Shown: positions 15,061-54,925 of the stretch, piece by piece
Layout of the letters: each line of letters opens with the position of its first letter
How positions within the stretch are numbered: the first letter of the stretch is position 1
Virus record (IMG/VR): IMGVR_UViG_3300043409_000928
Coordinates: 62,001 to 126,000 of that record
Direction: 5' to 3' (one strand)
DNA length: 64,000 nucleotides
Translations under genes and position numbers: made by a program
Notes under the pieces: model-generated
Told to the model about the DNA's origin: nothing
Database searches by the model: none
Seen by the model: only the letters and a program-made list of their open reading frames with translations

Positions 15061-16038
15061 TTAAGCTGAACGACTACGAATCATCTTTAGGATGTCATCG
15101 ACGCTGGGCTTTGCGGCTCCAGCAGGTGCGGCCACTGCGGTTGTTACTGTCGGAGCAGGCGCGGCCACTGCGGCAGGCTTGCTTGCTACTACTGGAGTGT
15201 CTTCATCAGCGTCAGCAACTGCCCCTGCTGTAGAAGCAGATGCGGTAAGTTGAACACCACTTGGACGATAAAACTTGCTCCACTTTTCTGGATCATACAA
15301 CTGACCATCAACACTGGCTTCAAACATTTCCATGATAGCACGAACTTCGTCTACACCTGGACGCTTGGGCATAAAGTCGTTCAAGTTGAACAGGCCGTGT
15401 GTTGCAATTGCTTGCAATTCCACTTCGTTCAAGCCACGCTCTTTACGTGCCCAACCTGATGTTGAGTAGTCAGCATAGCCACCCTTTTGCGTCTTGTTCA
15501 AACGGAAGTCTGTGCCACGCATGTAGTCTGTTGGCAATTCTTCCATGTCAGGATCCATTAAGGCCTGTTTGATCAAGGTAAAGATCTGTGGGCTGATGAT
15601 GAAACGGCGCACTGGATTTTCTGGAACACTTGATTCTTCCATTGGGCTGTTGACAACAAAACCTTGGAAAACATAACTGCGTTTCTTCCAATATTTGCGT
15701 CCAAGTGTTTCCATGTTGGGATCTTTGAACCAAGGACGGATTGTTGCGTGAACTGGACATGTTTCGTTCCACATTTCAACGCAAGGTACTTGAACAATAA
15801 CTTTCTTGTTTTCGTCTTGTCCCTTGACTCCCGGGAACTCAATACGAATCATTTGACGCTCACGCCAAAAGAATGTATTTGTGTCATCTCCATCTGGGAG
15901 AAAACGCATTGATGCGGATGTGCCTTCGGGGATATTCCAGTGTGCGTAAATTGCGTTATCACCGGTGCTGGTATTAGAACCACCAGACTTTTGTGCTTGC
16001 TCGGCTAGGCGAGCGCGGATTTCTGCTAAAGTTGCCAT
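15061..16038 (-). CDS. gp32: Single-stranded DNA-binding protein, gp32-like
   Basis: [37 protein letters not shown], flexible C-terminal tail. Confidence 0.88.
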
Positions 16039-16066
16039 GATAAATTTCCTTTATGTATTAGCCAAT

Positions 16067-16090
16067 AATAGTGTCAGACCCTATTGGGTC
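16067..16090 (-). promoter_or_regulatory. Candidate H-type pseudoknot in the gp32 leader
   Basis: GACC-C-AAUAG-GGUC-UGACA-CUAUU. Confidence 0.5.
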
Positions 16091-16127
16091 AAACAACACA
16101 CGCTTCAATTGTTTGGGCATGTGTTGT

Positions 16128-16157
16128 ATTATACTTATGATTGCAGTCAAAGAGCAA
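16128..16157 (-). promoter_or_regulatory. sigma70-type promoter of gp32
   Basis: TTGCTC-18-TATAAT. Confidence 0.55.
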
Positions 16158-16215
16158 TAGCCAAATCAATCTATTTTTGTCATTTTGGGCAAATGCGTTT
16201 AAATTGGTGTTTTGG

Positions 16216-16221
16216 TAAATA
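16216..16221 (+). promoter_or_regulatory. Late promoter TAAATA of the fibre gene
   Basis: Followed by a leader with SD AAGGA before ATG 16259. Confidence 0.7.
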
Positions 16222-16258
16222 TCTCAAAGCCACGACCCTGGCAAAAAGGAAAAATACA

Positions 16259-19200
16259 ATGTCAACTCGTAAAATTAATACCATCAAGGTAAACGATGTA
16301 ACACCAACCGACCACTTGGGACGGTTAGGTGAAATCACCTACAGAGACGGATACTTGTACTACCACGATGGTGTCACCCCAGGTGGTGAACTAATCAGTG
16401 GTGGCAGTGGTGGCGGAGGCGGACCTACAAGCTGGAGTAGCGTTACAGGCAAGCCCAGCTTTGCCACTGTTGCTACAAGCGGATCTTATGCTGACTTAAC
16501 TGGCAAACCAAGTATCCCAAGTAAAGTAAGCGACTTAACAAACGACAGTGGGTTTATTACCAGTGTTGCCTGGACGGATGTCTCTGACAAGCCAGCATTG
16601 TTCTCAGGTGCCTACACAGACTTAACTGGAAAACCAGCATTGTTCAGTGGCGACTACGATGACTTGACCAACAAGCCAACATTGACCACGGGACCTGCTG
16701 GTAATGATGGCGCCGCAGGCGCACAGGGACCACAAGGCGAACCAGGAGCCGCAGGCGCACAGGGACCTGCTGGTAATGATGGCGCCGCAGGCGCACAGGG
16801 ACCACAAGGCGAACCAGGAGCCGCAGGCGCACAGGGACCTGCTGGTAATGATGGCGCAGCCGGAGATCCAGGAGTAGGTGTACCGACAGGTGGTACAGTA
16901 GGACAAGTTCTTGCTAAAATAGACAGCACTGATTATAGCACAGAGTGGGTAACACCCGCTAGCGGCAGTGGCCCAACAAACGAAATTACTAACACAAGTC
17001 CAGAAGGCTCTATATATTCTGTTAGCGTAGGTACTGATGGTGTTGTTACTATGACAACTGCTCGTGGTGGCATTGAGTTCGGTGCCATGCCAGAAGTTGG
17101 CGGACCTTCACACTTCCACATCATGCGTCCAGCGGGACAAAATTCGTCAACTGATTTGTACTTTGGTGATGACTACAACTATGTTAAGATGCCAGGACTT
17201 TATGGATCAAATCCAACTACACAACAAGGTGTTGAAATTGGTTCCAGCATCAACGAAGGCACAGTCAGCGTTTGGAAGTTTGGCACAGATGGTACTACCA
17301 CATTCCCAACGCTAACAGTACCTATCAGCGACAATGCTAATCCAAGTGGCACTGGGCAAACTATAAAGTTCAGCGACTCCTCACAGCAGGCCATCATATT
17401 TGGACCAGCATCAACATCAGAAACTAATTCCGCTCAACGTATTATTATACAAGGTGCACCTGGATATACGGGAACTGGTGGCGAAGGTGGCGATGTTTAC
17501 TTGTGGGCTGGACCGGGCGGTGACACAGATGGTAATGGCGGTGATATCAAAGTCCGTGGTGGCTATGGCAATGGCACTGGTGGCGGTGGATACCTAAACT
17601 TCCAAGCAGGCGATAGTGCCACTGGTCAGGGCGGATACATCAATATTGAAAGCGGGGAATCTGGAACCCAGGGCCAGGGTGGTGATATTGATATTCGGGC
17701 TCGTAGTGGTGGAGACATTGATATCCGTGCTGATGGTGGCGGTGAAATAACACTACTCACACAGTCAGTAGGTGGAAATGAACACAATTGGCAGTTTGGC
17801 AACAGTGGTTCATTAACATTGCCTGGTGGTGGTATAATCACAGATAGTGTTCAAACTGTGACCATAAGTGGTGCTGGAACCTCAGAGGTGAATCAAACAT
17901 ACAACATAGTCTCCAATGGAGTGTATGTTGGGCAAACTGATAGTGCTTACCAAATTGACTACCCGGAGGCACCGTCTACCACATACAAACTACGCATCAA
18001 CACTGATGCCGGAGGGTTTTATGAATCTGAGGATCTTATCACCTGGACTATTGTGGCCGGTGCAGGTGGTGGTACAACACCTGTCCCTACTGGTGTCATA
18101 GTTCCTCAACGCATCACGGTCACTGTTGACTCAAGCAGTTGGAAGTTTGGCGCAGATGGTGATCTAGTATTACCCGCAGGCAAAACAATTAGAGACACAA
18201 GTGGCATAGATTTATTGGCCGACGACACAACATTATTAGAACCATACAAGGGCTTTAGAGCGCACTATGGTACCATGTACAATGGCACGGATGATGAAAA
18301 CGGTCCCATCAACAAACTGGTAATTTACAAATCCACAGCGTCACCTAGCAGTGCCATTGACACCAGCACTGAAAGTGATGACTTTCGAGTAACAGGCTTG
18401 ACCGGCAGTGATGTTGTGGCCATGTTGGTTGTTGTCAGTGATGGCACTGATTTTGAAATACAAACTCCCACTGCAACACTAAAGACATTTGTAGAAAAGA
18501 TCATTGATGAAGTTATCTTAGACGAAGGAGTCGAAGGTGATGTAAACACCGTGTCAGCAATGAGAACAGCATTCTACGCTAACTTCAGTAACTTTAACAC
18601 AGTGATTCCCAATGTAAAAGTTGACCTTGCGTTCTTCACTGTCAATAATCAGTTCAACATCAGTCCTCTATTTACTACAGGAGAAGGTGCAACATTTAGC
18701 GGCATAAGCTATAACATGGTCAACGACACGCTGGACTTGGGTAATTGGGGTCAATCAAATCCAGGTACACACGAAGTAGGTGACGTATATGTGATTCTTG
18801 GTAATACAATTCAAGATGCCAACAGTAATTTTCTTTTAACACCAGACAACGATGTTACTGTAACAATTACTGGTGTTAGTGGCGGCGCAATTCAAACTTA
18901 TACTGTAACAGGTACATTGCCTAGACCAGCAGAAATATGGCCAAGCACAAGTATCAGTGACGGTGGCGATGATGAATACGATGGTGCTAATGCTATTCAC
19001 ACCAACTTGGCCACAGAAATTAGTTACCGTGGCGGTGATGTTTACATTGAAGCAGATGAGTTTAACAGCAACGGCGAATCCACTTATGTTGTAACTTATC
19101 AAGCAGGTATTTTTGGTATATTTGCCACAGGCTGTGACATCAGCACTATAGGCACCAGCGGGGAGGGCGGCTATGGCAACGACAGCAGTAGTAGTGGATT

Positions 19201-20953
19201 TGACGGTGATGGCATTGCTGTCACTGGTAGCTTATATGGCGACAGCGAAAACGCAGTCGACATTGGTGACTTTGTGTTTACTAATTCCACACTTACTGCC
19301 ACAGGCAACGGTGGCGACATGTTCATCAAAGCAGGGGACGATCTGTGGCTGGATGCACTACAAGATGATGTTCATATTCGTGCCAGCGGTGATGTTAGAA
19401 TCAAAGTTGGCTATGATTTTGCCGAGGATACAGCACAATCTGAGTGGCAATTTGACACCGCTGGTTACATCTACTTTCCAGACGGTAGCCAACAAGGAAC
19501 TGCTTATACTGGTGACTATGATGATTTAACTAACAAACCAACTATACCAACCAGCTTCAGTAGTTTAGTCAACGGTTCTTTCACTGCAAGCCTTGGCACA
19601 GACGGCGTACTAACACTACCCGAAGGTGGCACTATAGATAACACACCAACAATCGTTACTGTTACAGTAGACCAGTTAACTTCTATCACAGCCTGGACTG
19701 GAACTTTGGTTTTTACTAGAGTCAGTGACATTTTATATCAAGTATTACCAAGTGGACCAACTATGGAACTGGTTGTCGATACTTGGAGACTGAGGTTTCA
19801 AACTGGTACATGGTACGAATCAACAGACCTTATAAATTGGGGAAATGTTGCCGGTTCATCACCTGCACCGGTTGGTACTCTGGAGATATTGGAGACAATG
19901 AACCTAACAGTGGATAGTAATGAATGGATCTTAGATAATAATGGCACATTAACATTGCCCTCAGGTGGCACTATCTCGGAAGGCGGTGGATTTACTGGTG
20001 CTATTCGACTAACGCCTGCAGGTGGCTCCAACGAATATCAAGCATTGGTAATTTATCCAACTGGCACAGGAGATGGTGATCACATACACTTGACCGCAGG
20101 TGGTGGCACCACTGAACTGTATCTTGGCAGTGACAGCCACTTTGTCAAGTTGGCAAATGATGGCGCTGTAGTAATACAGGCCAATGATGGCGTATCTAGT
20201 AATCAACAATGGCTGTTTGACACAGCTGGTAAACTACAACTACCAGCAGGTGGTGATATTGTTGACAGCACGGGCACAACAGTATTAGGTAGTGGAACTA
20301 CATTGCCCGCAAATGCCAGTGGTTATTTGGTCAACGATGGTGCTGGTGCGTTGTCCTGGGCCGCGGGTGATGGCACATTCAGTGGCGCTTACGCAGATCT
20401 AACTGGCAAGCCAACATTGTTTGATGGTGCATACAGTAGTTTAACTGGCACACCAGCATTGTTCTCAGGTGTTTATGCTGACTTGACTAGCAAGCCAACA
20501 TTGTTTGATGGCGACTACAATAGTTTAACCAACAAGCCAACCATCAGAATAGCTGTGGCAACTGGCAGTGGTCCTGGTGGCAACTTGCAAGCAGATTCAC
20601 TGGCCTTGGCTGGTCTTAACCCCACCGAAAACATACCATCAACTTGGGGTGGCGACCTAATACTTCAAGGTGGTGTAGGTGGCGCCAATGGTGACTTGTA
20701 TGGTGAAGTTAGAATCAAAAGCGGTACAATTGGTGCAAATTATGAATGGCACTTTACTACTGATAAGAAAATTAAATTACCAGCAGGTGGCGACATTGTC
20801 AACAGCACTGGTACCAGTGTAATGGGTGGTAGTGGTAGTTATGCTCCAGCAAATGCCGGTAACTGGGCAGGTACTGCTCCTACTACAATAGCCGAAGCAT
20901 TGGATCGAATAGCTGCCAAGCTTGCGTCTTCGGGTAGTGCTAACATGCCTTAA
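16259..20953 (+). CDS. Large mosaic tail fibre/adhesin with collagen-like segment, 1564 aa
   Basis: Start reassigned to MSTRKIN. G-X-Y repeats, FSGxYxDLTxKP repeats, repeated WxFxxxGxLxLPxGGxI motif, G/T/S-rich. Confidence 0.8.
16691..16857 (+). repeat. 72-bp perfect tandem repeat (2 copies plus 23 bp) encoding collagen triplets
   Basis: Units begin at 16691, 16763 and 16835. Confidence 0.9.
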
Positions 20954-20958
20954 AACAG

Positions 20959-20981
20959 AAAAGCCCCGCAAGGGGCTTTTT
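20959..20981. terminator. Bidirectional terminator between convergent genes
   Basis: AAAAGCCCC-GCAA-GGGGCTTTTT. Confidence 0.9.
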
Positions 20982-21865: not shown

Positions 21866-23422
21866 TTATAAGAAGCCAATTGGCATAGGGCGCAGTATTT
21901 CTTCTGTCCCTGCATTAATAAGTCGATCGTATGTTTTAGCGTCCCAAGTCATAATAACTTCTACCATACGCAATACCAGTATAGTTGCCATTACCAAGTC
22001 ATCTGTTTCGCCATCTTTAGCGGCAAAACTTGCTCCGCGGGCAATAAAGTTCTTAAGTTCTCGTAGCAAGTTATGACTATAAATTGTCATCTTATCACTT
22101 TCTACATAATTCTTTAGTCGCATACATGCTGATATTTTTGTTTTGTGAGTAGTAGCAAAGCCGCGGCGCCCCTTGCTTTGTCCTGCTCTGCGTACTTCTT
22201 GCACAAATGTACCAGAAATATTTTGTTCTCCATACTCCCTTACACTAATAAGTGCCGCTTCACCAATTGTGTTGTTTTCTACTGACCAATATAATTCTGC
22301 ACTATTCCCAGTTTCTTCTTTTAGCCAATTTAAAATGGCAACAAGTGTACGCAATTGCCCTTGAATGTCGGTTTTATTATGTTGCCATTCAGCTATTTGT
22401 TCTAGTTCAGGTAGTTTGAATACTTGAATGGCCGCTGGGTCGCTACCTGTGCCCAAACTAGGATCCCAACCAATTACATACGCACCTTGCGGTTGTGGAT
22501 ATTTGAAAATTCTAACTTGTCCCAGCTTGCCACTGGGTTCTTTGCTTTCCATTGTGATTAACTTCATTGAGTTAACCAGTGTTTCGTCTGCAATGATAAA
22601 TTCACATTCGTGTTCGCGCAAGAAACGTTCTTCACCAATTTTAACACGTTCAGTTGCGGCCCAAGCCTCATCGCGATCAGGATGCGAGTTCCAAATAAAT
22701 TTAATGCTGGCAAATCCATTACGACCCAGTCCGGTGGCATTTGGATTACCATATGCATCAGTTTTCTTGGTAGCGTCTTTCCAAATACGTGCAAATTGGT
22801 CATCGTCTTGATTAGGTGTACTAGTAATAATACACTTACCACCTGTACTCAATGTAGGACTGATTGAAGTCCAGAACTCACTGGCTATGCGTGGTTTAAC
22901 GAATGCAAACTCATCGCAATAAATCAATGACAGTGACATACCACGTGCTGTTGTTTCTGTTGTTGTGGTTGATACAATACGACTACCATTGTCAAAGTCA
23001 ATACTACCTTTGTTGTAGCTTGTTGCACCAGCTTTTAAAAATGTTGGAAGTGTTTCGTATGTATAGCGAACCCTTTGCATAATCTCTTGTGCACCGGCAA
23101 ATTTATGGGCCGCAATAAGAATAGTTTGATCTGCCATAAACATTGCTCGCCAAACTAGGTAAGCGGCCGCACATGCAGTCTTGCCCATCTGTCGTCCTAA
23201 CATGTTGATGCTGTAACGATTGTTGTGATAACAATCAATCAGTTCACGTTGATAATCAAACAGCTTGAATTGAACTTTACCTCTGGTTGGATGTTGCACC
23301 CAGCAGTACGTGTCGATAAAGTATATAGGATCTTGAGCGCACAAGGCAAGTTCACGGACATTATCGTCCGTGAACTTTTCTACCTTGAATGGAGCCTTTA
23401 CAAAAGTATTCTCAAGTGCCAT
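21866..23422 (-). CDS. gp17: Terminase large subunit, gp17-like
   Basis: GRQMGKT, LIYCDEFAF, STP, nuclease motifs WDPSLGTGSD and DDLVMA. Confidence 0.95.
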   Translation of the reverse strand: MALENTFVKAPFKVEKFTDDNVRELALCAQDPIYFIDTYCWVQHPTRGKVQFKLFDYQRELIDCYHNNRYSINMLGRQMGKTACAAAYLVWRAMFMADQTILIAAHKFAGAQEIMQRVRYTYETLPTFLKAGATSYNKGSIDFDNGSRIVSTTTTETTARGMSLSLIYCDEFAFVKPRIASEFWTSISPTLSTGGKCIITSTPNQDDDQFARIWKDATKKTDAYGNPNATGLGRNGFASIKFIWNSHPDRDEAWAATERVKIGEERFLREHECEFIIADETLVNSMKLITMESKEPSGKLGQVRIFKYPQPQGAYVIGWDPSLGTGSDPAAIQVFKLPELEQIAEWQHNKTDIQGQLRTLVAILNWLKEETGNSAELYWSVENNTIGEAALISVREYGEQNISGTFVQEVRRAGQSKGRRGFATTHKTKISACMRLKNYVESDKMTIYSHNLLRELKNFIARGASFAAKDGETDDLVMATILVLRMVEVIMTWDAKTYDRLINAGTEEILRPMPIGFL

Positions 23423-23437
23423 TGCTGGCCTCCAATC

Positions 23438-24820
23438 TTACTTTTTACGAGCGATGTTTTCAGAAACAAACTTTCTGTATTCACCCATTGCAGTTTCAAA
23501 CTGTTCTTCAACTGTAACTGTGTGAGTACCATCACCCATTGGGTTTTCACCTTGACCGTTAGCACGGTTTGCGCCAAAGTCTTTACGGCCTGCAGCCTGG
23601 CCACGAGCCGATGGCAAGTTGTCAAACAACTTTGGCTCTGGCATACTTGTACCTTCGGGGCTGTTTGCAAGTTTGCCTTCTGCAATTCCTGCAAGAGCTA
23701 AAATACGACTGTATTCTTGCTGACCTTCATATACACCTTGGCCATATATATTGTTTGATATTGCTGGTGCGTCTTCTTTGACTTCTTTGTCTTTGTCTGC
23801 CCAATCAGGAATGCCATCACCATCTTCGTCAGGCTTCTTGTTGTCGTCTTTCTTTTCGGCTTTGTCGTCTGACTTTTTGCCACCTTTGGCAGCAATCATT
23901 TTTGCAAATGCGGCCTTTTGTGCGGCGCTTTGTGCTTCGTTGGTAACGCCAGCAAGTTGAAGGATACGAGCAGATTCGCCAGACGATTCATGTAAACTAT
24001 CAAATGCCAGTTCGTTTGCAAGTTCACCGTGCTGATCATTGAGTTCATCCATTTCATCATCACTTAGGTCTGTGCCGTCAGTGAACGAAGCTTGGCTGAT
24101 GTATGCATCACTAAAATCTGGATAGTCTCTGGAATCCACACCATCAACTTGAAGACTGGCTCTGTCAACTTCTTTGCCAGAAATCATAATGCCTGATGCT
24201 TCGTTAACATAACCAGATTCTTTAACTTCTTCTTCTTCTTCTTTTTCAGGAACTGCACCTGCTGGAACTGGTGTGTCGTCTTCGTGGTCGTCTTCTGATC
24301 CACCATAATTGCCCGGCCCTGCTTTGTGAACTTGTCCTGTTGGAGTCTGTGTAACTGTTCCACCTTTGGAAGTTCTTGAAACATCACCAACTGCTTCGTG
24401 GGCAATTTTTTCTTCTTGCTCATCTTCGCCGCTGTTGGACATATCGGCTACATCACCACTGTTGGCCATTTCACCACTGTTACTCATATCACCGCTGTTG
24501 GCTCCAACATACATAACTTCTGGTTCGCTTGCACCAATTTCTGCGGCATGATCAGTTATGTCATGGTCGCCGTCACCGTCAACATCGCCCATTGGGGCTT
24601 CGCCACCTAACGTAATACCTGCTAAACGAAGAATGTTGCCAATTTCGTCTGCACTATCTGTCGTAACACTAATGTTCTTTCCTGGCATAGAAATTGTTAC
24701 TGACATTTGCTCGCCATTTCCATCTGAAGTCATTTCCTGACCCTCCATGTCATCCCAACATTCTTCTATGCCTTCTTTGGCTAATCGAATGCCTTCGTTT
24801 AATTTATTATTTGTTTTCAT
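23438..24820 (-). CDS. Acidic modular protein, probable internal head protein
   Basis: Very D/E-rich, three ILxLAG(I/V) motifs, many (L/I/V)xE sites. Confidence 0.65.
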   Translation of the reverse strand: MKTNNKLNEGIRLAKEGIEECWDDMEGQEMTSDGNGEQMSVTISMPGKNISVTTDSADEIGNILRLAGITLGGEAPMGDVDGDGDHDITDHAAEIGASEPEVMYVGANSGDMSNSGEMANSGDVADMSNSGEDEQEEKIAHEAVGDVSRTSKGGTVTQTPTGQVHKAGPGNYGGSEDDHEDDTPVPAGAVPEKEEEEEVKESGYVNEASGIMISGKEVDRASLQVDGVDSRDYPDFSDAYISQASFTDGTDLSDDEMDELNDQHGELANELAFDSLHESSGESARILQLAGVTNEAQSAAQKAAFAKMIAAKGGKKSDDKAEKKDDNKKPDEDGDGIPDWADKDKEVKEDAPAISNNIYGQGVYEGQQEYSRILALAGIAEGKLANSPEGTSMPEPKLFDNLPSARGQAAGRKDFGANRANGQGENPMGDGTHTVTVEEQFETAMGEYRKFVSENIARKK

Positions 24821-25434
24821 TACTTTGTTCCTTTAGTTTGCACTTTAGGATTCTTTACAGAACTTAAAGGACTCAGGCTAGTTTTTACTTCAAAGTCGGG
24901 TTTGCTTTCTTTAGCATCAGACTTGATGCCAGCCTTAACAATATTTGCTTTGGCATCTGCGCGACTCTTGTCAAGATCTTTTAACAAATTTTGTGTATGC
25001 TTATCCCCAAAACATTCTTCTGCTGAAACTGCATTTGCTTCTGCCGCTGTGTAGTCAGTGCCTGTAATGGCTTCTACTTGTTCTTTGGCTTCTGCTTCTA
25101 TTTGTTGTTCCACTGGCTCATCGCGCCCAAATACTTTTAATGTACCCTCGGATGCAAATAACAATGTACGAAGTTCTGATTCCAGTGTTGGCATGCTGAC
25201 TGGCAACCTTGTTACCACATCCATAATAACAATTTCATGTCCAGCATACTGTGAAAAGTCCATTGGCTGTGCTTGAAGCATTAGTTTTTCTGGACGACCT
25301 ACTTCCAGTGCGTCATATTTCTTCATATGTCGCTCTACTATTTCAAGTTGACTTTCAGTTGGCTGAAAAACCATCTTGATACGATAGCGATGTTCTCGCT
25401 GTAATTGATTAATGTACTCTAATAAAGTGGGCAT
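24820..25434 (-). CDS. Hypothetical late protein, 204 aa
   Basis: TAAATA at 25456-25461, SD GAGGA. Confidence 0.75.
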   Translation of the reverse strand: MPTLLEYINQLQREHRYRIKMVFQPTESQLEIVERHMKKYDALEVGRPEKLMLQAQPMDFSQYAGHEIVIMDVVTRLPVSMPTLESELRTLLFASEGTLKVFGRDEPVEQQIEAEAKEQVEAITGTDYTAAEANAVSAEECFGDKHTQNLLKDLDKSRADAKANIVKAGIKSDAKESKPDFEVKTSLSPLSSVKNPKVQTKGTK

Positions 25435-25454: not shown

Positions 25455-25961
25455 CTATTTATTGTTACCCGCACTCTTTAGGATGGCTTTGACAATGTCG
25501 TTACGATTTCCTGTAATACCTGCATCTGTAGCATCAATTACATTGTTCGAATCGTTACCTTTTTCGTTGTCCAGTCTTGCTTTACGCAATTGTAGTTCAA
25601 CCATTTTAAGTTTTTTGTCTATTTTTGCTGTTTTGGCGTCAACTGCTGTTTTAAGTAGCTGTGCCGCAACTTCAAATATTTTACCAGCATTCCTATCATC
25701 AACATTAAAACCCAAATCCATCAAGCGATCACTGTGCTCTTGTGCGAGATTGGCCAAAATGTCAAGCTCACGCTCAGCATTTGCCATATCTGTTACTGTT
25801 GGTAACGCCAAGTCAACACGATTTGCCATATCAATTGTAGCTATGGCAGTATCTAGTTCGCTCTGTATTTCTTCAGGTAGCTGAGAATCTTGAGTGTCTT
25901 GTTCGAGGTTAGCTTCATCAATCGGTGGGAAGCCAAAAACCTCTTCTAATTTTTTAGTCAT
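25455..25961 (-). CDS. Probable terminase small subunit, gp16-like
   Basis: Helical protein with FEVAAQLLKTAVD resembling the gp16 core, upstream of gp17. ATG lies 5 nt after TAAGTA. Confidence 0.55.
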   Translation of the reverse strand: MTKKLEEVFGFPPIDEANLEQDTQDSQLPEEIQSELDTAIATIDMANRVDLALPTVTDMANAERELDILANLAQEHSDRLMDLGFNVDDRNAGKIFEVAAQLLKTAVDAKTAKIDKKLKMVELQLRKARLDNEKGNDSNNVIDATDAGITGNRNDIVKAILKSAGNNK

Positions 25962-26425: not shown

Positions 26426-26718
26426 TACAATTCACGGGCTACCAATCCTGACACAGTCTTTACTGAGTCTTTCCTGTATCGAATAGTGCTGGGTAAATTT
26501 TTATTAATTATATCAAGGATGGGTTGCTCAACATCAAGCTGGCCGTCACGAATGCTATTATCTAAGAATTTTTTAAAATCAATGTCAAGGTCTTGACATA
26601 ATTTCCAAAAAGATAATACCAAGCTTTCTGCAGGAGTCCTACTAAGTCCAATGGCCAGTATGCGTTGTACCGCTTTATCAAATTCAACTTGTGGTATTAC
26701 TTTATAATTCATGATCAA
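26425..26718 (-). CDS. Hypothetical protein, 97 aa
   Basis: Coupled ORF within the late operon. Confidence 0.65.
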   Translation of the reverse strand: MIMNYKVIPQVEFDKAVQRILAIGLSRTPAESLVLSFWKLCQDLDIDFKKFLDNSIRDGQLDVEQPILDIINKNLPSTIRYRKDSVKTVSGLVAREL

Positions 26719-28139
26719 TAAACCTTATCGCGTGGTGCCTTAATGCGGCCATGCCCCGTTGCAGTATCTGGTGGCTGTTTGTATATGCCCGCTTGTTCCA
26801 ATTGTACTTGTCTAGATACAATTTCATTACCTTTTGCATCATTTGGTCTTGATCGGATCACGCTGGTACCTTCTCTTACTGTATTTGGTGCAGGTTCCTG
26901 AGATTTTAAATTGGCATTGGCAGAAGCTATGCCGGCGTCACTGGTTCTAGTTTGAGTTGGATATTTTGAGCCATCTCTTTGGGCGGCGGCATCTGCCGCC
27001 AGTTTGGCCATTTGCTGGGACTGTGGTGAATTGCTCAATGGAGGATTTTTCTTAAGATTTTCAATATAGGATTTTTTATATTCTTCGCTATAAGTAGAAT
27101 TTTTCATGTTAGCTTCTTCTTGTGTAACAAGATCTTTATGCTTTTGAGTAAGCTCTGGTTGTTTATTTGAAGTTGCTGGTATGTTACTTCCTGTACTTGG
27201 GTTTACTGTTCCTGCGGCCACACTATTTGTTGAAGCGGTTCCGTTTGCTGTTCCACCAGGCCATGCACGGGCCGCTTCTCTAGCGGCATTGGCCTGTGCG
27301 GCACGATCGCGTAAACTGCCAGGTCTGATATTTGGATTGCCCAGGCGTGTTTGATTTGTCATAGTAGGATTGCCAGTAGCGGCGCCGCCGCCTGTGACTG
27401 TGCCGCCAGCATTTGTCCAAGCGTTTCCAAAGTCAGGTTTTTTAGTCTCAGCAACAGCATCTGCCTTTGGCGGCTTGGTAATAGGAGTAAAAGAAGAGGA
27501 TGTCTTTTTATCATTTGATATCACTGGCTTTGGAGGCTTTGGTAATGGTTTAATAAGTGTTGGCGGAAACTTTGGAGTAGGACCTTCAAATCCAGGGCCT
27601 TTTAAATCTTCGTAACGAACGGTAATTGTCCATAGTACAGGATCACTTGTTGAGTAGTCTAACGTATCATGCTGAGCATCAACGATGAAAGCATTTGTCA
27701 AGGTGTATACTTTGGGGGCGGCGCCAGGTGCAGATAAGTTTTTCATTGTGATTTCAATTGTCAATGGTTTAAATTTACTGGCCTTGCTTGAATCTGTAGG
27801 GTCAAATTGATCTTTGACAAAGTTCCAAATCATTGATTCAGCAGTACCATTTGCCTGATCATAAAAACTGATGGTGATTGGTTCGTAGTTTAACTTTGTT
27901 TGTACAATTGTTTTATGGTTGTACACATTGACAATTTGCGTTTCTACTGAGAAGCGGGGCAGTTCGCATGACTTTGCCACCAATGGTGGAGCAGAGCTTA
28001 AATCTGAGTCAGTGACCTTAATTGACCATGCATATTTTAAATATACAAAACCATCGCCCAATGGCAATTGATTGGGGTACGGTCCATGGTTCTGTACTCC
28101 ATTTAATATCTTCTTAGTTGCAATGTTACTGAATGACAT
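26715..28139 (-). CDS. Tail-tube-fold protein (gp54/gp48-like) with long C-terminal extension
   Basis: N-terminal ~180 aa parallels the tube gene (ELPRFSVET...VYNHK...YEPITISFYD), followed by a P/K- and A/T/N-rich tail. Confidence 0.65.
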   Translation of the reverse strand: MSFSNIATKKILNGVQNHGPYPNQLPLGDGFVYLKYAWSIKVTDSDLSSAPPLVAKSCELPRFSVETQIVNVYNHKTIVQTKLNYEPITISFYDQANGTAESMIWNFVKDQFDPTDSSKASKFKPLTIEITMKNLSAPGAAPKVYTLTNAFIVDAQHDTLDYSTSDPVLWTITVRYEDLKGPGFEGPTPKFPPTLIKPLPKPPKPVISNDKKTSSSFTPITKPPKADAVAETKKPDFGNAWTNAGGTVTGGGAATGNPTMTNQTRLGNPNIRPGSLRDRAAQANAAREAARAWPGGTANGTASTNSVAAGTVNPSTGSNIPATSNKQPELTQKHKDLVTQEEANMKNSTYSEEYKKSYIENLKKNPPLSNSPQSQQMAKLAADAAAQRDGSKYPTQTRTSDAGIASANANLKSQEPAPNTVREGTSVIRSRPNDAKGNEIVSRQVQLEQAGIYKQPPDTATGHGRIKAPRDKVY

Positions 28140-28148
28140 TTGTTCATG

Positions 28149-28175
28149 AAAAAGGGCGAGTTTAATCGCCCTTTT
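28149..28175 (-). terminator. Terminator after the tail tube gene
   Basis: AAAAGGGCGA-6 nt-TCGCCCTTTTT. Confidence 0.8.
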
Positions 28176-49178: not shown

Positions 49179-50378
49179 TTAGATGAAGCTTAGGCTTGTG
49201 CTATCAATAGCGATAGTGTTTACATAATCAGCCGCATTACCTAAAGAGGAACCTGCATTTGACAATTCAACATATCCATAACGAGTCATGAAGCTTACTG
49301 TTGGCTCGAATGTTGCTGGATCTAAAATAACACCAGAACTCATCAATGGAATGTATGGGCAATAAAATGCTGGAGCATCCATCTCGTTTGCGCCTTTGTA
49401 ACCAACTAGCACTGGACTTGCATCGCCTGCATAGTGGTTTACATAAACACGAACTGAGCTGTTTAATGTACCAACAAACTTAGTATTTGTTGGGGCTTCA
49501 AATGTACCTTCTGTTGTACGAGCAAATGCGCTGGTAGTGGCAGATTGTAGAATTGTTAAAGCTGTTGGGCTAACAACGATGTAGTTACCAGCACCACGAC
49601 GTGTGCGGGCGGCAATATCGTTAGCGGCACGGTTTACTAATACTGCAAGTGCGGCGTGTTGATCACCAACAAAGTTGGCTTGACCTGATACTGCTGACTG
49701 ATCGTATGTACCAAAAGCAGAACCTGCCAAGTTGATCAATGAACCGATAACTTCTTGGTCGATTTCAGCAGTAATTTCTTGTGCTAGAGCGGCCATGATT
49801 TCAGCTTCAACATCAACACCGTGGATGGCTTGAGCGTCTTGAGCCGCTTCAAATGTCCAACGAGCTGACAACTTGCGTGATTTAGCTTCAACAGTCTCTT
49901 TCAAGATCTGGATGTTCATCTTTCTGCCGCCGGCACCTTCTAAGGTACCTGTGGCTTCAGCTTTACCAGCTGTGCTACCAGAATACTGAGTAGCGATGCT
50001 GAATGGGCTTAGTGCTTCATCGCTGGCTGTAACAGCTTTACCGATGTTGCCGTCTGCGGCTGAACTTGCACTTACTGATTCTGCATAACGCACACGCAAT
50101 GTGTGGATCTGAGAAACTGGGCCTTGCATTGGTTGTACACCAACTAATTCGTTAGCAATGGTTGTTGGCATTACACGACGAATAACTGGCAAAATAACCT
50201 TGTTTAGTACGCTGATGTTACCAGAAGCTGTACCACCGGCAGTGGCTGTTTCTGTCAAATACTTCTTAGTATTTTCTAAGCATACTTCCATTGTAGTCTT
50301 ACGCTGACCACTTAGACCTTCTAAAAGGGCTGATTTAGTAGCTGACCAATTTTTAGCTTCAAATAGAGCTTGTGACAT
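49179..50378 (-). CDS. gp23: Major capsid protein, gp23-like
   Basis: LPVIRRVMP, GVQPMQGP, KSRKLSARWTFE, EITAEIDQE, FYCPYIPL, FMTRYG. Confidence 0.96.
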   Translation of the reverse strand: MSQALFEAKNWSATKSALLEGLSGQRKTTMEVCLENTKKYLTETATAGGTASGNISVLNKVILPVIRRVMPTTIANELVGVQPMQGPVSQIHTLRVRYAESVSASSAADGNIGKAVTASDEALSPFSIATQYSGSTAGKAEATGTLEGAGGRKMNIQILKETVEAKSRKLSARWTFEAAQDAQAIHGVDVEAEIMAALAQEITAEIDQEVIGSLINLAGSAFGTYDQSAVSGQANFVGDQHAALAVLVNRAANDIAARTRRGAGNYIVVSPTALTILQSATTSAFARTTEGTFEAPTNTKFVGTLNSSVRVYVNHYAGDASPVLVGYKGANEMDAPAFYCPYIPLMSSGVILDPATFEPTVSFMTRYGYVELSNAGSSLGNAADYVNTIAIDSTSLSFI

Positions 50379-50395: not shown

Positions 50396-51508
50396 TTAAT
50401 TCTTAATACCAGCGAGTTTACGAAGTTGTTGAATTGTTTCATCAGCTTCGGCTGGGATGGCAACGATCTCTACTAGAGATTTGTTACCGGTAATCACAGT
50501 CTTCTGCGATTGGTGTCCTTCAATAAGTTGTTTCTTCTCTCGACGAACTTCCTCATTTAAGACAGACGGCAAGTATTTCTGGAAATGGTCTTTTAGTTTA
50601 GTAGTATCAGTACCTTCTAATAACTCTTCCATTACACCACGTTTGTCTTTTGACAATGGTGAGCATAATTCTTGCATAACGCGAACTCGCTGTGCTTGAT
50701 CTTCCGCAATGCGCTGATGACGAAGCGACTCGCTAATTTGTACTTCTTTTTGTGTTAGTTTTGTATTAGCCTCGGCCAATTGGCCTTGAATTTCGATAAT
50801 TGATTTGTTAAGTTGGCTAACGGCAGTGCCGTCTGCAAACTTAGATGCCATAAATTCTGCGGCAAACGCTTCCATGATCTTGCGACCAAAGTTGTTTTCT
50901 TTTGCTTCACGAATATCTGTTTTTAACTGTGTCATTTCTTTTCTAAATGATTCAGCAACCAAGGTATTAACTTTTTCGCTTGCTTTCTTAACAAAAGCTA
51001 CCTTAGTTTCATTAATTGCTTTACGACCTTCTGCAACTAGTTTAACACGAGCTTCTACTAGTTTCTTGTGATCTTCATGTAATTCACTTAGTTCACCTGT
51101 TAGTTTGCGTAATGCAAATTCTTCAAGTTGACCAATTGCTACTTTAGAAGCTGTACGATCTGAACGAAGTTCGCTGATTTCTTTTGTTAAAGTTCCAACA
51201 ACTAGCTTTTGTAACAAAGCTGTATCTTCTTTGATCTTGGCGGCATACTTTGTGCGCTGTCCAACTGCTTCTTCACGCAATGTTTTTAATTCTGTTGCAC
51301 CGGCACTGATAGTGTCTTGCATTAACTTATCCATTGCTTCAATAAGTTGACCTTTATCGTGATCGTAGCGTGTAGCAAATTCTTCACGCAGTTCTGCCGT
51401 GATGTTTTCACGGCTTTCGGCTAAATGTTTATCCCAAGCGGTGTTGATATTATCGCGCACCTCTTCGGACAAAACTACTGAACCGAGCATTTCTGTAAAT
51501 TGACTCAT
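50396..51508 (-). CDS. gp22: Prohead scaffolding protein, gp22-like
   Basis: Coiled-coil protein between protease and MCP. Confidence 0.85.
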   Translation of the reverse strand: MSQFTEMLGSVVLSEEVRDNINTAWDKHLAESRENITAELREEFATRYDHDKGQLIEAMDKLMQDTISAGATELKTLREEAVGQRTKYAAKIKEDTALLQKLVVGTLTKEISELRSDRTASKVAIGQLEEFALRKLTGELSELHEDHKKLVEARVKLVAEGRKAINETKVAFVKKASEKVNTLVAESFRKEMTQLKTDIREAKENNFGRKIMEAFAAEFMASKFADGTAVSQLNKSIIEIQGQLAEANTKLTQKEVQISESLRHQRIAEDQAQRVRVMQELCSPLSKDKRGVMEELLEGTDTTKLKDHFQKYLPSVLNEEVRREKKQLIEGHQSQKTVITGNKSLVEIVAIPAEADETIQQLRKLAGIKN

Positions 51509-51521
51509 TATAGTAATCTCC

Positions 51522-52163
51522 TCAGACTTTTCTTAAACTTGAAATGAATTTTGATACTTCATTTTCAAGATGTTTTTGTGCGGACCGATCGTGGTTCACC
51601 GCGTAGGCCACATCCATTAGAGCGGCACGTCTACGACTGCCCATTACTCTTTCATAAATTGCGGTAGGGTAGGCTTCTGGAGCACTGGGTTGTGCTACAA
51701 CGTCAACTGTTACGATTTCAAACTCGGAAACATTACCAGATTCCTGGACATTTCCTGAACCGCGACTGCTGACACCTAACTTAACACCACTTTCAAGTAA
51801 TGTTTTGATAATGTTACCCATCGGAGTTGGAATAAGTTTTAATTTACCATATCCATTGGGGCCATCCATCCACATCTCAGTGACCATATGACTTACTCGG
51901 TCAATGTTCACTTGTAGATCGTCTGGATGATCTGCTTCTCCTAATACGGACAAGCCACTATCTAGTCGTTTTCGAATGCTCTCTACAGCATTGGCAATTT
52001 CGTTAACAGGGTAAATGCGCGAATTATGATTGCGTACTCCGCCTTGTATAAAAACGCCTTTCATGTAGAGATCCTTACCGCCACTGGCCGAGTCTTTAGA
52101 TTCGACAACCATAGCTGCCTGATCAAAAGTTAAGTGTTCGCGTAGTGGCTGTAGGTTCTGCAT
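51522..52163 (-). CDS. gp21: Prohead protease, gp21-like
   Basis: LGEADHP, GVSSRGSG, DVVAQPSAP. Confidence 0.93.
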   Translation of the reverse strand: MQNLQPLREHLTFDQAAMVVESKDSASGGKDLYMKGVFIQGGVRNHNSRIYPVNEIANAVESIRKRLDSGLSVLGEADHPDDLQVNIDRVSHMVTEMWMDGPNGYGKLKLIPTPMGNIIKTLLESGVKLGVSSRGSGNVQESGNVSEFEIVTVDVVAQPSAPEAYPTAIYERVMGSRRRAALMDVAYAVNHDRSAQKHLENEVSKFISSLRKV

Positions 52164-52166
52164 GGT

Positions 52167-52847
52167 TTAACCTTTTGTTGAAACTTTGCTAAGAGCTGGC
52201 TTAGTAGTGCCGCCCATGTCTTGTGCTTTTGGTGCTTTAGCTGGTGATGTACCACTAGCTGTACCTTCTGCTGATCCACCTGCAAAGTTTGTTGCTGGAC
52301 GGGCCATCATCGGGTTGCGTTTAGCAACTGGACTTTGTTTTTCATCGGCTTTGTCGCCGTTGTCTGGGGAAGAAACTTTGGTTAATTCTGCAGATTCTTC
52401 AATGCTTTCTGGCATATCTTCAGGAGCAACTTCTGTATCATCTACAGGAGCTTCTTCTTCGCCGCCAACCATTTGTTCAAATTCTGCTTTTAATTTTGCT
52501 AATGCGGATTCAACATCCATCATTGCATCTGCAACATCGCCTGCATCTGCATCAACTGGCGCTTCTGCACCCATATCAGCACCTAAATCGGCTGTTGCGG
52601 CTTCGTCATCGCCCATTTCTGGTGCAACTTCTTCGTCGCCTTCTTCAGTTAAATCTGCATCTACTTCATCAGATAAATCAGAAATAGCGTTTAAATCTTC
52701 GTCTTCGAAGTTGATGTCATCTGCCATAATATCTTCATAGACTTGACGGCCGATTCCAACATAGTAATCATGTAACAATGCAGAGGCTTTATCCTCTTCT
52801 TTATTTAGAAGGTGATCCAATGCTTGTTCGAGAACTGTTTTGCTCAT
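52167..52847 (-). CDS. Acidic prohead core protein, gp67/gp68 position
   Basis: Highly acidic, between portal and protease. TAAGTA at 52908-52913. Confidence 0.6.
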   Translation of the reverse strand: MSKTVLEQALDHLLNKEEDKASALLHDYYVGIGRQVYEDIMADDINFEDEDLNAISDLSDEVDADLTEEGDEEVAPEMGDDEAATADLGADMGAEAPVDADAGDVADAMMDVESALAKLKAEFEQMVGGEEEAPVDDTEVAPEDMPESIEESAELTKVSSPDNGDKADEKQSPVAKRNPMMARPATNFAGGSAEGTASGTSPAKAPKAQDMGGTTKPALSKVSTKG

Positions 52848-53251: not shown

Positions 53252-54925
53252 TTAAGCTGGAGGAGATGCAGCCGGTGTTGGGCTTGCAGAAGCGCCAGTA
53301 TCAGCTGTATCTGTGGCAACATCAGGAGCGGCACCTAGATCACCTATGCCACCTGACAGGTCTAAGTCACCTTCTGAAGGACCTTTTAATCCAGTTGCAC
53401 CAAAGTCTGCACCTTCTTCATTTGGTTGACTTTCCCCGGCATTTTCTTCTCTCCAGGCTTTTTCGTTTTCTAAGATTTCATCATCTGTCAGTCCTAAGAA
53501 TTTCTGTAGTTTGAAGCGATGTGCTAGATACGGAATTTCTGCTAGCTGTGTGAATACTGCGGCACGGGCATTGTTAATTTCAATTTCTCTGTAGCCACTG
53601 AAGTTTTGCGGCTCAAGCATGTCAATATCAAAACTCGAGCTATCAATATTAACACCACGCTGTTTTAAGAATATTTTAAATTCTTTATCTAAATACGGAG
53701 CAACTAAACCTTGTAATCGTCTGCAATATCGATTGAATCGAAATTCCTGAATTAATGCTGTACCCATACGTCCGTCTGTAAACTGTACAGCAGTATCATC
53801 TGGGCCAGTTGGCAAATAACTACTTGGAATACGCAGACCACGCAGTAACTTATTAGTAAAAAACTTCAAGTCGTCAATTTCACCCAGCCCTTGCCCACCG
53901 GGCAATACTTCAACTTTTGATCCACGACCATCGGCTGTTTGTGCAAAGAAGAAATCTTCCATGATACTCAATGGATTATAACTAGCATCCATTTGTGTAC
54001 TACCACCAGAACGAGTTGGAATACGGCGTTGATGTATTTCGTTTTTAACACGCTCAACGAAAGCCATGGCCTGGTGACTTGGTAAATTGCCTGTATCAAT
54101 ATAGAATACTCTGCGTTCTGGAGCTCGCTGTACACGATAGATGATAATAGCATCTTCAAGTAATTCTTTTTGCTTGTAAATTTTAAATACACTATCTAAA
54201 ATACTTGCACCAAACGGCCAGCTAGCATCTAACCCTTCATTTAATGTGATATGTATAACATGCTCACCATCAACAGCAATTTCACCACCCTGTGCTCCAG
54301 GTTTACCGTAATTACTGCCTTGACTATATACCCCTGGCGTGTTAGGTGCCGCGGCACCTGTTAATGTCTGTACATTATCAATAGGTTGTGTTGCAACTTT
54401 ATTTGCAAAGTTAGGGTGTACATTGGCAATAACATATTGTTCAACTGCGCGACCTTCGGCTTCATTGATAACTGCTCGTTTCACATCTGCTGAGTTAACC
54501 CAGTACAGTTCAAATGTTTCTGGATCACGCAAGAAGAAATGATCACCATACTTGATTGCATTTCTAAATGTACGGAATATACGCTGATCCATTTTATTAA
54601 TGGCACACCACTTTTTCAATGATGCAGTAACAATCTTACTTTCACTTTCTGTTGGTTCTTCTTTCCACATCACACGGAATGGTAAATTTGTATCTGGTTC
54701 TGATTGTGTGCAAAATTCAGCAATGGTGTCCAGTGCGGCATTGATCTCGCTGTCTTGGTCCATTTGATCGTATTGAACATATCGTTCAACTCTGTTTGGT
54801 TGTCCAGTGTATACATCTTGTAACCAAGATGCAAATTTTGCAGAAGATCCTTGAACAGCTTGACGGCCATTACTTTTTAGTTCACCTTCTGGTTCCCAAA
54901 TTTTAAAATGTTTTCTCCAACTCAT
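53252..54925 (-). CDS. gp20: Portal protein, gp20-like
   Basis: EDAIIIYRVQRAPERRVFYIDTG, EDFFFAQ, LPGGQ, LRIPSS. ATG lies 5 nt after TAAGTA. Confidence 0.95.
   Translation of the reverse strand: MSWRKHFKIWEPEGELKSNGRQAVQGSSAKFASWLQDVYTGQPNRVERYVQYDQMDQDSEINAALDTIAEFCTQSEPDTNLPFRVMWKEEPTESESKIVTASLKKWCAINKMDQRIFRTFRNAIKYGDHFFLRDPETFELYWVNSADVKRAVINEAEGRAVEQYVIANVHPNFANKVATQPIDNVQTLTGAAAPNTPGVYSQGSNYGKPGAQGGEIAVDGEHVIHITLNEGLDASWPFGASILDSVFKIYKQKELLEDAIIIYRVQRAPERRVFYIDTGNLPSHQAMAFVERVKNEIHQRRIPTRSGGSTQMDASYNPLSIMEDFFFAQTADGRGSKVEVLPGGQGLGEIDDLKFFTNKLLRGLRIPSSYLPTGPDDTAVQFTDGRMGTALIQEFRFNRYCRRLQGLVAPYLDKEFKIFLKQRGVNIDSSSFDIDMLEPQNFSGYREIEINNARAAVFTQLAEIPYLAHRFKLQKFLGLTDDEILENEKAWREENAGESQPNEEGADFGATGLKGPSEGDLDLSGGIGDLGAAPDVATDTADTGASASPTPAASPPA

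What the first reader, a model, noticed from the sequence alone, without database searches (positions are those of the whole stretch)
23438..24820. Probable protease-processed head polyprotein with a repeated ILxLAG docking motif
Seen: modules end in (L/I/V)xE (LNE, VKE, VNE, LHE, VKE, VYE, IAE, VSE). ILRLAGI, ILQLAGV and ILALAGI recur, and the scaffold ends in LRKLAGIK. Inserts include a compact domain (VDGVDSRDYPDFSDAYISQA), Ca-binding-like DVDGDGD and DEDGDG loops, and a SNSG repeat. Known: T4 gp21 cleaves after (I/L)xE. Inference: cargo peptides are packaged through a scaffold-like motif and released on maturation, as possible ejected effectors.
Basis: partly seen in the sequence, partly recalled or inferred. 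Interest (0 to 1): 0.6.

Follow-up and report, generated by a model that had tools for sequence, protein, structure and literature searches.

The report
Scaffold-tail mimic motif in head protein
An acidic, mostly disordered protein of a 285-kb jumbo phage carries three copies of the short peptide that ends the phage's scaffolding protein. This peptide is probably a portable signal for loading proteins into the head, but nothing shows that the protein is a polyprotein cut into effectors.

Summary
ORF 23438-24820 (-) encodes a 460-aa protein (pI 4.3) with ILRLAGI, ILQLAGV and ILALAGI. The scaffold (50396-51508, -) ends LRKLAGIKN.

- **Not chance.** The strict motif occurs 7 times in the genome's ORFs against 0.5 expected. 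All 121 homologues scanned carry at least one copy, and 87 carry three. Every scaffold homologue checked ends in [RK]LAG[IL] or LSG[IM], down to about 30% identity.
- **Portable.** The motif also sits near the N-terminus of two small proteins of this phage, in PA5oct gp281 and gp249 (both detected in virions by mass spectrometry), in Atu_ph07 gp111 and in RaK2 ORF050, which is annotated as a virion structural protein.
- **Modular.** The family is a conserved chassis. At least ten unrelated small inserts sit just upstream of the motifs. The window's copy carries one, a well-folded 75-aa domain that also occurs as stand-alone phage proteins.
- **Weaker claim.** [LI]xE is not enriched in this protein (4 against 4.4 expected), although it is in the scaffold (22 against 7.2). 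Only a T4-CTS-like N-terminus (MKTNNKLNE|G) and the IAE|G after motif 3 are good candidate cleavage sites.

Best reading: a prohead-interior docking motif shared with the scaffold tail. The binding partner, the processing and any ejection are untested.

The parts
23438..24820 (-). Gene for the 460-aa acidic protein P0001 (pI 4.26; 98 D+E against 41 K+R). Its start codon overlaps the stop of the upstream 204-aa gene, and it ends 15 nt before TerL.
   Evidence: No Pfam or PHROG hit. 267 metagenomic homologues.
24794..24820 (-). N-terminal MKTNNKLNE|G, a candidate T4-CTS-like propeptide ending in L-x-E followed by G or S.
   Evidence: The site is kept in 112 of 115 homologues. T4 IPII and IPIII start MKTYQEFIAE|A. 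RaK2-like orthologues start MKKQINE|A.
24605..24712 (-). The most conserved block (residues 37-72): a beta-hairpin, then a helix, ending in motif 1, ADEIGNILRLAGI (motif at 24614-24634).
   Evidence: Invariant columns M39..I69. AF2 gives E39-45, E48-54 and H57-66. It resembles the scaffold tail EADETIQQLRKLAGI.
24452..24502 (-). SNSG low-complexity repeat, an 18-nt unit repeated 2.8 times, inside the variable acidic linker.
   Evidence: The linker is poorly conserved.
23972..24199 (-). Optional insert domain (residues 208-283, VDGVDSRDYPDF...). It is compact and well folded, and only about 10-15% of homologues have it.
   Evidence: pLDDT 90-97. Column occupancy 0.1-0.2. It matches stand-alone 66-82-aa phage proteins (TM 0.77-0.90). 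No PDB or Pfam match.
23945..23965 (-). Motif 2, ILQLAGV, at the C-terminal end of a long helix (H265-289).
23789..23830 (-). DEDGDGIPDWADKD, a DxDxDGxxDxxD-type acidic loop. It looks calcium-binding by eye only.
   Evidence: Conserved in about 75% of homologues. No Pfam TSP_3 hit even at E<10.
23678..23704 (-). Motif 3, ILALAGI, with an I-A-E|G candidate cleavage site built on its last residue.
   Evidence: [ILVM]xE is kept in 113 of 121 homologues, with S, G or A at P1'.
23441..23677 (-). Conserved C-terminal module (...GANRANGQGENPMG...EEQFETAMGEYRKFVSENIARKK) ending in a helix (H437-459).
   Evidence: It is weakly alignable to the RaK2 ORF050 C-terminus (hhalign E 0.063).
50396..51508 (-). 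Scaffolding protein (370 aa). Its last nine residues, LRKLAGIKN, lie at 50399-50425.
   Evidence: phrog_10922 and position between protease and MCP. Tail invariant in 76 homologues and in cultured relatives. [LI]xE 22 against 7.2 expected.
51522..52163 (-). gp21-type prohead maturation protease.
   Evidence: phrog_207, E 2e-57
49179..50378 (-). Major capsid protein of the T4 gp23 family. Three invariant LxE sites lie in its first 43 residues.
24820..25434 (-). Upstream 204-aa protein, translationally coupled to P0001. It is a homologue of PA5oct gp282, a virion protein.
   Evidence: phrog_14802
21866..23422 (-). Large terminase, immediately downstream.

Best explanation
P0001 is a conserved, acidic, largely disordered head protein of a PA5oct-like jumbo myovirus. 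It carries three copies of a short helix-capping peptide, consensus E-x-[AG]-[RN]-I-L-x-L-A-G-[ILV]. This is the same peptide that forms the invariant C-terminal tip of the phage's scaffolding protein.

The tip is most likely the scaffold's docking peptide for a conserved site inside the prohead. The gp23-type capsid protein is the favoured partner; the protease, the portal and the scaffold itself remain possible. By copying the tip, P0001 and at least two small proteins of this phage would be co-assembled into the prohead core.

The protein acts as a chassis. Its N-terminal block, its C-terminal block and the three anchors are constant, while unrelated small domains are inserted just upstream of the anchors in different relatives. 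Processing by the gp21-type protease is probably limited to a few sites: removal of a 9-residue T4-CTS-like N-terminus, and a cut at IAE|G after motif 3. It is unlikely to be cut at every module boundary.

**Shown:** the motif, its conservation, its identity with the scaffold tail, its portability, the modular inserts and the disorder.

**Inferred:** location in the head interior, the binding partner and cleavage.
For: - The motif is statistically enriched and invariant across 121 homologues.
- The scaffold tail [RK][RK]LAG[IL] plus 0-4 aa is invariant from 97% to 35% identity. It is kept as LAGI or LSGI in PA5oct, Atu_ph07, Phosso, XacN1, RaK2, Serratia BF, XbC2 and Ecwhy_1.
- Unrelated carriers have the same motif. 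In this genome two small ORFs carry it near the N-terminus, and both keep it in a 58%-identical relative. In PA5oct, gp281 has ILRLAGV at residues 7-13 plus ISKLAGI, and gp249 carries one copy. Atu_ph07 gp111 starts MDIERLKILAGL.
- hhalign aligns P0001 and gp281 only over the motif, so the motif is a portable linear motif.
- In PA5oct all four non-scaffold annotated genes with the strict motif are flagged as detected by mass spectrometry, against 93 of 461 genes genome-wide. RaK2 ORF050 is annotated as a virion structural protein.
- AF2 places each LAG at the C-terminal end of a helix in an otherwise disordered chain.
- Inserts cluster just before motifs 2 and 3.
- A gp21-type protease is present. 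The scaffold is threefold enriched in [LI]xE, and the MCP has invariant LxE sites in its N-terminal 43 residues.
- The N-terminus MKTNNKLNE|G is conserved and resembles the T4 IPII and IPIII propeptide MKTYQEFIAE|A. That propeptide is the 10-residue capsid targeting sequence removed by gp21 (PMC9026906).
Against: - There is no direct evidence that the motif binds anything. The one complex prediction (MCP with residues 36-80) gave no verdict.
- PA5oct gp281 is a positional analogue, not a demonstrable homologue. Homology with RaK2 ORF050 is weak (E 0.063).
- The PA5oct mass-spectrometry list also holds replication enzymes, so detection there is weak proof of head location.
- There is no A/S covariation between scaffold tail and carrier. 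Ecwhy_1, Serratia BF and XbC2 have LSG scaffold tails but LAG in the ORF050 orthologues.
- [LI]xE is not enriched in P0001.
- The gene sits in the tail-tube, head-completion and terminase cluster, not in the head module.
Confidence: 0.5

Rival explanations
1. The protein is a polyprotein cut by the prohead protease after (L/I/V)xE at every module boundary, which releases cargo peptides or domains that are ejected into the host as effectors.
For: - A gp21-type protease is encoded nearby.
- Variable inserts sit between the anchors.
- The insert domain also exists as stand-alone phage proteins.
- VKE|S and VNE|A precede the insert, and IAE|G follows motif 3.
- T4 offers a precedent: CTS-tagged internal proteins and Alt are ejected (PMC9026906).
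Against: - [LIV]xE and [LI]xE counts match composition, unlike the scaffold.
- The sites flanking the insert exist only where the insert exists.
- Motif 2 is followed by TNE, which has no hydrophobic P3.
- No insert has an enzymatic or toxin-like family.
- The conserved parts, not the inserts, dominate the protein.
Confidence: 0.15
2. The protein is an auxiliary scaffold or core protein, analogous to T4 gp67 and gp68. Its three anchors would cross-link capsid subunits or scaffold molecules during assembly of the very large head. It would then be degraded or expelled and would have no role after assembly.
For: - It is acidic and disordered, like core proteins.
- It is multivalent, with three anchors.
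- It is conserved in a fixed position across the clade.
- Its motif is identical to the scaffold tail.
Against: - The analogues in PA5oct and RaK2 are recorded in mature virions, whereas the PA5oct scaffold gp330 is not.
- [LI]xE is not enriched.
- Variable inserts are hard to reconcile with a purely architectural role.
Confidence: 0.2
3. The motif docks to the portal, terminase or neck machinery rather than the capsid shell. The protein would then be a packaging or head-completion accessory, in line with its gene neighbourhood.
For: - The gene lies between a gp4-like head-completion gene, a TerS-like 168-aa gene and TerL in all relatives.
- Atu_ph07 gp111, which carries the motif, is also directly upstream of TerL.
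Against: - The motif is the invariant tail of a scaffold present in hundreds of copies. That fits a shell or core partner better than a 12-mer portal.
- Other carriers (PA5oct gp249, the two small ORFs, RaK2 ORF050) are encoded far from the terminase.
Confidence: 0.1
4. The recurrence is a by-product of internal duplication in a low-complexity protein and has no shared function with the scaffold tail.
For: The protein contains low-complexity tracts and a tandem DNA repeat. P0004 shows a local duplication around motif 3.
Against: - Flanks of the three motifs differ while L-A-G is invariant in 328 instances.
- The same motif occurs in non-homologous proteins of four distant phage genera and at every scaffold C-terminus.
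Confidence: 0.03

Closest known systems
T4 capsid targeting sequence (CTS) of internal proteins IPI, IPII and IPIII, and the Alt propeptides
   Same: - A short portable peptide directs otherwise unrelated proteins into the prohead core of a gp21/gp23-type myovirus, and the protease can then remove it.
- The P0001 N-terminus, MKTNNKLNE|G, resembles MKTYQEFIAE|A.
- PA5oct gp281 has the LAG motif at residues 7-13, followed by VKE|S.
   Different: - The LAG motif has a different sequence.
- It is present in up to four copies per protein. It can be internal or C-terminal, and it is shared with the scaffold's own tail.
- The T4 scaffold gp22 has no such tail.
- Targeting has not been shown here.
Scaffold C-terminal coat-binding tails (P22 gp8; 80alpha gp46 and its mimic SaPI1 CpmB; herpesvirus scaffold C-terminus with its M-site cleavage). 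Cited from my own knowledge.
   Same: A conserved extreme C-terminal helix of the scaffold is the shell-binding element. In 80alpha/SaPI1 a second protein copies it in order to bind the same site.
   Different: - Here the copy sits inside a disordered, multivalent virion protein and in small proteins, not in a size-redirecting scaffold.
- No structure or binding data exist.
Encapsulin cargo-loading peptides
   Same: A peptide of about 10 residues, on flexible linkers, binds a conserved pocket on the lumenal face of an HK97-fold shell. It is used to recognise secondary cargo encoded elsewhere in the genome (PMC8229669).
   Different: - Encapsulin peptides are mostly C-terminal single copies on enzymes.
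- The partner pocket is known for encapsulins and unknown here.
- The sequence resemblance (hydrophobic-x-hydrophobic-small-small-hydrophobic) is from memory only.
phiKZ and SPN3US inner-body and ejection proteins
   Same: Jumbo-phage heads are packed with many extra proteins processed by a gp21-like protease after Glu (PMC9026906).
   Different: - This is a different phage lineage and a different cleavage motif (S/A-x-E).
- No shared docking motif with a scaffold has been described there.

Membership tests
T4-type CTS-bearing internal head proteins | N-terminal propeptide of about 10-20 aa ending in L/I-x-E followed by a small residue | tested here: met
   MKTNNKLNE|G. The site is kept in 112 of 115 homologues with G or S at P1'. 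T4 IPII and IPIII were read for comparison.
T4-type CTS-bearing internal head proteins | Incorporated into the prohead core and present in the head | not testable with these tools
   Indirect only. PA5oct gp281 is flagged as detected by mass spectrometry, and RaK2 ORF050 is annotated as a virion structural protein.
T4-type CTS-bearing internal head proteins | Cleaved by the gp21-type protease, with the mature part ejected with the DNA | not testable with these tools
   The protease gene is present. No proteomic data are held; the PA5oct supplement is not available.
gp22-type scaffolding / prohead core proteins | Long coiled coil encoded between protease and MCP | tested here: not met
   The AF2 model is mostly disordered, with no long coiled coil. 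The gene lies 26 kb from the head module.
gp22-type scaffolding / prohead core proteins | Dense L/I-x-E sites for degradation | tested here: not met
   4 against 4.4 expected in P0001, compared with 22 against 7.2 in the scaffold.
Protease-processed polyprotein | Cleavage motif at every module boundary, conserved across relatives | tested here: not met
   Only the sites at residues 7-9, 18-20, 347-349, 363-365, 379-381, 437-439 and 452-454 are conserved. Those flanking the insert occur only together with the insert. Motif 2 lacks an adjacent site.
Thrombospondin-type-3 / OmpA-linker calcium-binding repeat | Match to the family profile | tested here: not met
   No TSP_3 hit at E<10. The DxDxDGxxDxxD pattern is seen by eye only.
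Small terminase | Small oligomerising DNA-binding protein that is absent from virions | tested here: inconclusive
   P0001 is 460 aa, acidic and disordered, and its analogues are in virions. The 168-aa neighbour (25455-25961) is the better TerS candidate, and its PA5oct homologue gp283 was not detected by mass spectrometry. No family hit supports either.

The most novel reading that the evidence does not exclude
The x-L-[AS]-G-[ILM] tail is the universal capsid-interior address code of the whole RaK2/PA5oct/Atu_ph07/XacN1 jumbo-phage clade. The scaffold uses it to bind the shell, and any protein that acquires a copy is loaded into the head. The P0001 family would be a dedicated multivalent carrier into which phages insert interchangeable small domains, which are delivered to the host with the DNA. 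Enzymes whose sequences contain such a motif, for example the RaK2 Sir2 C-terminus and the PA5oct ATPase gp149 (internal motif), could then be packaged cargo too.
Probability: 0.15. Interest if true: 0.8.

Novelty: new variant of a known kind. Interest (0 to 1): 0.55.

Why it matters
Jumbo phage heads contain dozens of proteins, and how they get inside is unknown outside T4 and the phiKZ group. A short sequence-defined loading signal, shared with the scaffold tail and conserved across a clade that includes therapeutic candidates (PA5oct, RaK2-like phages), would do three things:

- It would let head-interior proteins be predicted from sequence alone.
- It would give a handle for packaging foreign cargo, as the T4 CTS did.
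- It would define a testable scaffold-shell contact for heads with very large T-numbers.

The variable inserts also mark a hot spot where these phages exchange small domains of unknown function.

Tried and rejected
- **Complex prediction.** MCP (alignment A2) with P0001 residues 36-80 (alignment A1) scored 0.00 and gave no verdict, so it is evidence neither way.
- **Family scans.** Pfam, PHROGs and tblastn against cultured phages found nothing for P0001. Pfam found nothing for ten insert-bearing homologues.
- **Fold searches.** PDB searches (Foldseek and VIA-align) matched only generic long helices, and the insert domain had no hit.
- **Ca-binding repeat.** Not confirmed by Pfam.
- **A/S covariation.** The test between scaffold tails and carriers was negative. 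LSG scaffolds coexist with LAG carriers.
- **Homology to PA5oct gp281.** Only the motif aligns.
- **T4 and T7 scaffolds.** T4 gp22 has no such tail. T7 gp9 contains AIINLAGE, but I treat this as a possible coincidence.
- **Promoter.** No T4 late promoter (TATAAATA) occurs in the window.
- **Literature.** Searches found no description of the motif. The PA5oct supplement with peptide coverage is not held.
- **Small-terminase reading.** Rejected on size, charge, disorder and the presence of the analogues in virions.

Full report
**Setting.** The window is bases 62001-126000 of a 285,304-bp phage genome. Its large terminase is 52% identical to that of Pseudomonas jumbo phage PA5oct. More distant matches are Atu_ph07, Vibrio phage 2.275.O and the RaK2/121Q group.

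The window holds a T4-type head module:
- portal, 53252-54925
- an acidic 226-aa protein, 52167-52847
- a gp21-type protease, 51522-52163
- the scaffold, 50396-51508
- a gp23-family major capsid protein (MCP), 49179-50378

The finding lies 26 kb away in a minus-strand unit: sheath, tube, second tube paralogue, 97 aa, gp4-like head-completion protein, 168 aa, 204 aa, target, TerL, 304 aa. Terminator-like hairpins at 28150-28175 and 20959-20980 bracket this unit. PA5oct has the same gene order, and so do metagenomic relatives.

The motif is not a chance recurrence. A strict form occurs 7 times in the genome's ORFs against 0.48 expected. Six of those are in credible genes: three in the target, one at the scaffold C-terminus, and one near the N-terminus of each of two adjacent small ORFs at genome positions 238981-239184 and 239189-239587, outside the window.

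Of 121 metagenomic homologues, 87 have three copies, 31 have two, three have one and one has four. The consensus is E-x-[AG]-[RN]-I-L-x-L-A-G-[ILV], with L, A and G invariant or nearly so (L 327, A and G 328 of 328 instances).

**The scaffold tail.** In 76 IMG/VR scaffold homologues, from 97% down to 35% identity, the protein always ends [ILM]-[RK]-[RK]-L-A-G-[IL] followed by 0-4 residues. Cultured relatives keep the tail:
- PA5oct: LRRLAGIK
- Atu_ph07: LKRLAGIKK
- Phosso: LRRLAGIEK
- XacN1: MMKLAGIKG
- RaK2: LSILSGIIKK
- Serratia BF: SQLSGINKKR
- XbC2: TKLSGMDKNR
- Ecwhy_1: DVLSGINKK

. T4 gp22 lacks it. The tail is therefore a clade-wide functional element. The context of motif 1 in the target (SADEIGNILRLAGI) is close to the scaffold end (EADETIQQLRKLAGI).

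**Portability.** PA5oct gp281 is the positional equivalent of the target and is flagged as detected by ESI-MS/MS in virions. It starts MFNINDILRLAGVQAVKE|S and has a second copy, ISKLAGI. Profile comparison aligns it with the target family only over the motif.

A full scan of the PA5oct genome found the strict motif in five annotated genes: the scaffold, gp281, gp249 (a structural protein), the ATPase gp149 and UvsX. The UvsX hit is probably chance. All four non-scaffold carriers are flagged as detected by mass spectrometry, against 93 of 461 genes genome-wide. That list also contains enzymes, so the enrichment is only suggestive.

Atu_ph07 gp111 lies directly upstream of TerL and starts MDIERLKILAGL. 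The two small ORFs of this phage keep the motif in a relative that is 58% identical.

RaK2 ORF050 is an acidic protein annotated as a virion structural protein. It has ARMMELAGQ and KRMTQLSGIV, an N-terminus MSKKINE|A, and a C-terminus resembling the target's (hhalign E 0.063, weak). Its orthologues in XbC2, Ecwhy_1 and Serratia BF have two LAG copies. These phages have LSG scaffold tails, so A and S seem interchangeable, and a covariation argument is not available.

**Anatomy of the protein.** AF2 with 75 homologues gives mean pLDDT 58.6, and 213 residues fall below 50. Each LAG sits at the C-terminal end of a helix: H57-66, H265-289 and H369-376.

The only confident fold is residues 208-283 (pLDDT 90-97). 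This domain is missing from most homologues. It also occurs as stand-alone 66-82-aa phage proteins. It has no PDB or Pfam match.

Across the family the following parts are constant: the N-terminal block (residues 1-72), a TSKGGTVTQT region, motif 2 with its following helix and the DxDGDGxPDWADKD loop, motif 3, and the last 88 residues. At least ten unrelated inserts occur. Most sit just upstream of motif 2 (15 of 72 homologues) or motif 3 (6 of 103), and 8 homologues have an N-terminal extension. One insert brings its own fourth LAG motif, and one has a hydrophobic, membrane-like stretch. None has a Pfam family.

**Processing.** T4 gp21 cuts after L/I-x-E. The 10-residue N-terminal CTS of IPIII both targets the protein to the head and is removed (PMC9026906). 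The protease in this phage belongs to that family.

Two observations support a similar specificity here. The scaffold has 22 [LI]xE against 7.2 expected. The MCP has invariant L5xE7, L18xE20 and L41xE43. A coiled coil may inflate the scaffold count, which is a caveat.

The target shows no enrichment: 4 against 4.4 for [LI]xE, and 11 against 6.8 for [LIV]xE (P=0.06). Conserved candidate sites are L7-N-E9|G, I18-E-E20|C, V347-K-E349, V363-Y-E365, I379-A-E381|G/S, V437-E-E439 and V452-S-E454.

The first of these resembles the T4 IP propeptide. It recurs as I-N-E|A in the RaK2-like orthologues and as I-V-E|G in the small 132-aa motif carrier. I therefore expect limited trimming rather than a polyprotein cascade. 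This is inference only.

**Mechanism and confidence.** The favoured model (0.5) is that the tail peptide docks the scaffold to a conserved prohead-interior site and that carriers copy it to be loaded. By analogy with other scaffolds and with encapsulin cargo peptides (PMC8229669), the MCP is the most likely partner. The only test I could run gave no verdict, and no related scaffold has been solved.

The rivals are:
- a pure auxiliary scaffold (0.2)
- the full polyprotein and effector model (0.15)
- a portal or terminase partner (0.1)
- chance duplication (0.03)

**Novelty.** I found no description of this motif in the literature. The family has no Pfam or PHROG entry. The principle is known from the T4 CTS and from scaffold tail mimicry. 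Three things are new: the motif itself, its multicopy chassis architecture, and its reach across the clade.

Noticed in passing
window 15965-20953 (+): A 1662-aa ORF on the opposite strand with collagen-like G-x-y runs ([22 protein letters not shown]...) and repeated 'YxDLTGKPxLF' units. It is probably a long fibre protein.
   Followed up: no
window 26715-28139 (-): A second tail-tube paralogue (phrog_4542 over residues 37-178) with a basic, low-complexity C-terminal extension of about 300 aa. PA5oct gp286 has the same architecture.
   Followed up: partly
window 25455-25961 (-): A 168-aa protein with a central coiled-coil-like stretch. It is conserved next to the gp4-like gene, and its PA5oct homologue gp283 is not in the virion list. 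It is a likely small-terminase candidate but has no family hit.
   Followed up: partly
G000:C1:238981-239587 (outside the window; L003 2981-3587, -): Two adjacent small genes (67 and about 132 aa) carry the LAG motif near the N-terminus. The larger one starts MDKKQIVE|G. In more distant relatives its C-terminal domain is fused to a different N-terminal region that lacks the motif.
   Followed up: partly
L142 1389-2126 (RaK2 Sir2-like gene); PA5oct 234078-235193 (ATPase gp149): RaK2 Sir2 ends ...VLDLSGIISKRMV*, which resembles the RaK2 scaffold tail LSILSGIIKK*. PA5oct ATPase gp149, which was detected by mass spectrometry, contains SDILQLAGINKD. These could be packaged enzymes or chance matches.
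   Followed up: no
L013 1951-2874 (T7 gene 9): The T7 scaffolding protein contains TVKAIINLAGESRAKAFGRK, which is similar in form to the ILxLAG motif. No test of relatedness was made.
   Followed up: no
window 49179-50378 (-) and 50396-51508 (-): The MCP has three invariant LxE triplets within its first 43 residues, which suggests an N-terminal propeptide. The scaffold carries 22 [LI]xE sites against 7.2 expected.
   Followed up: partly
protein P0091 (metagenomic homologue), residues about 300-350: One family member carries an insert with a long hydrophobic, glycine-rich stretch that looks like a membrane segment. This is unusual for a head-interior protein.
   Followed up: no
window, whole: The canonical T4 late promoter TATAAATA does not occur at all, against 3.4 expected. 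A gp55-like late sigma factor is annotated in the PA5oct record (not checked in this genome). The late promoter consensus of this lineage must differ.
   Followed up: no
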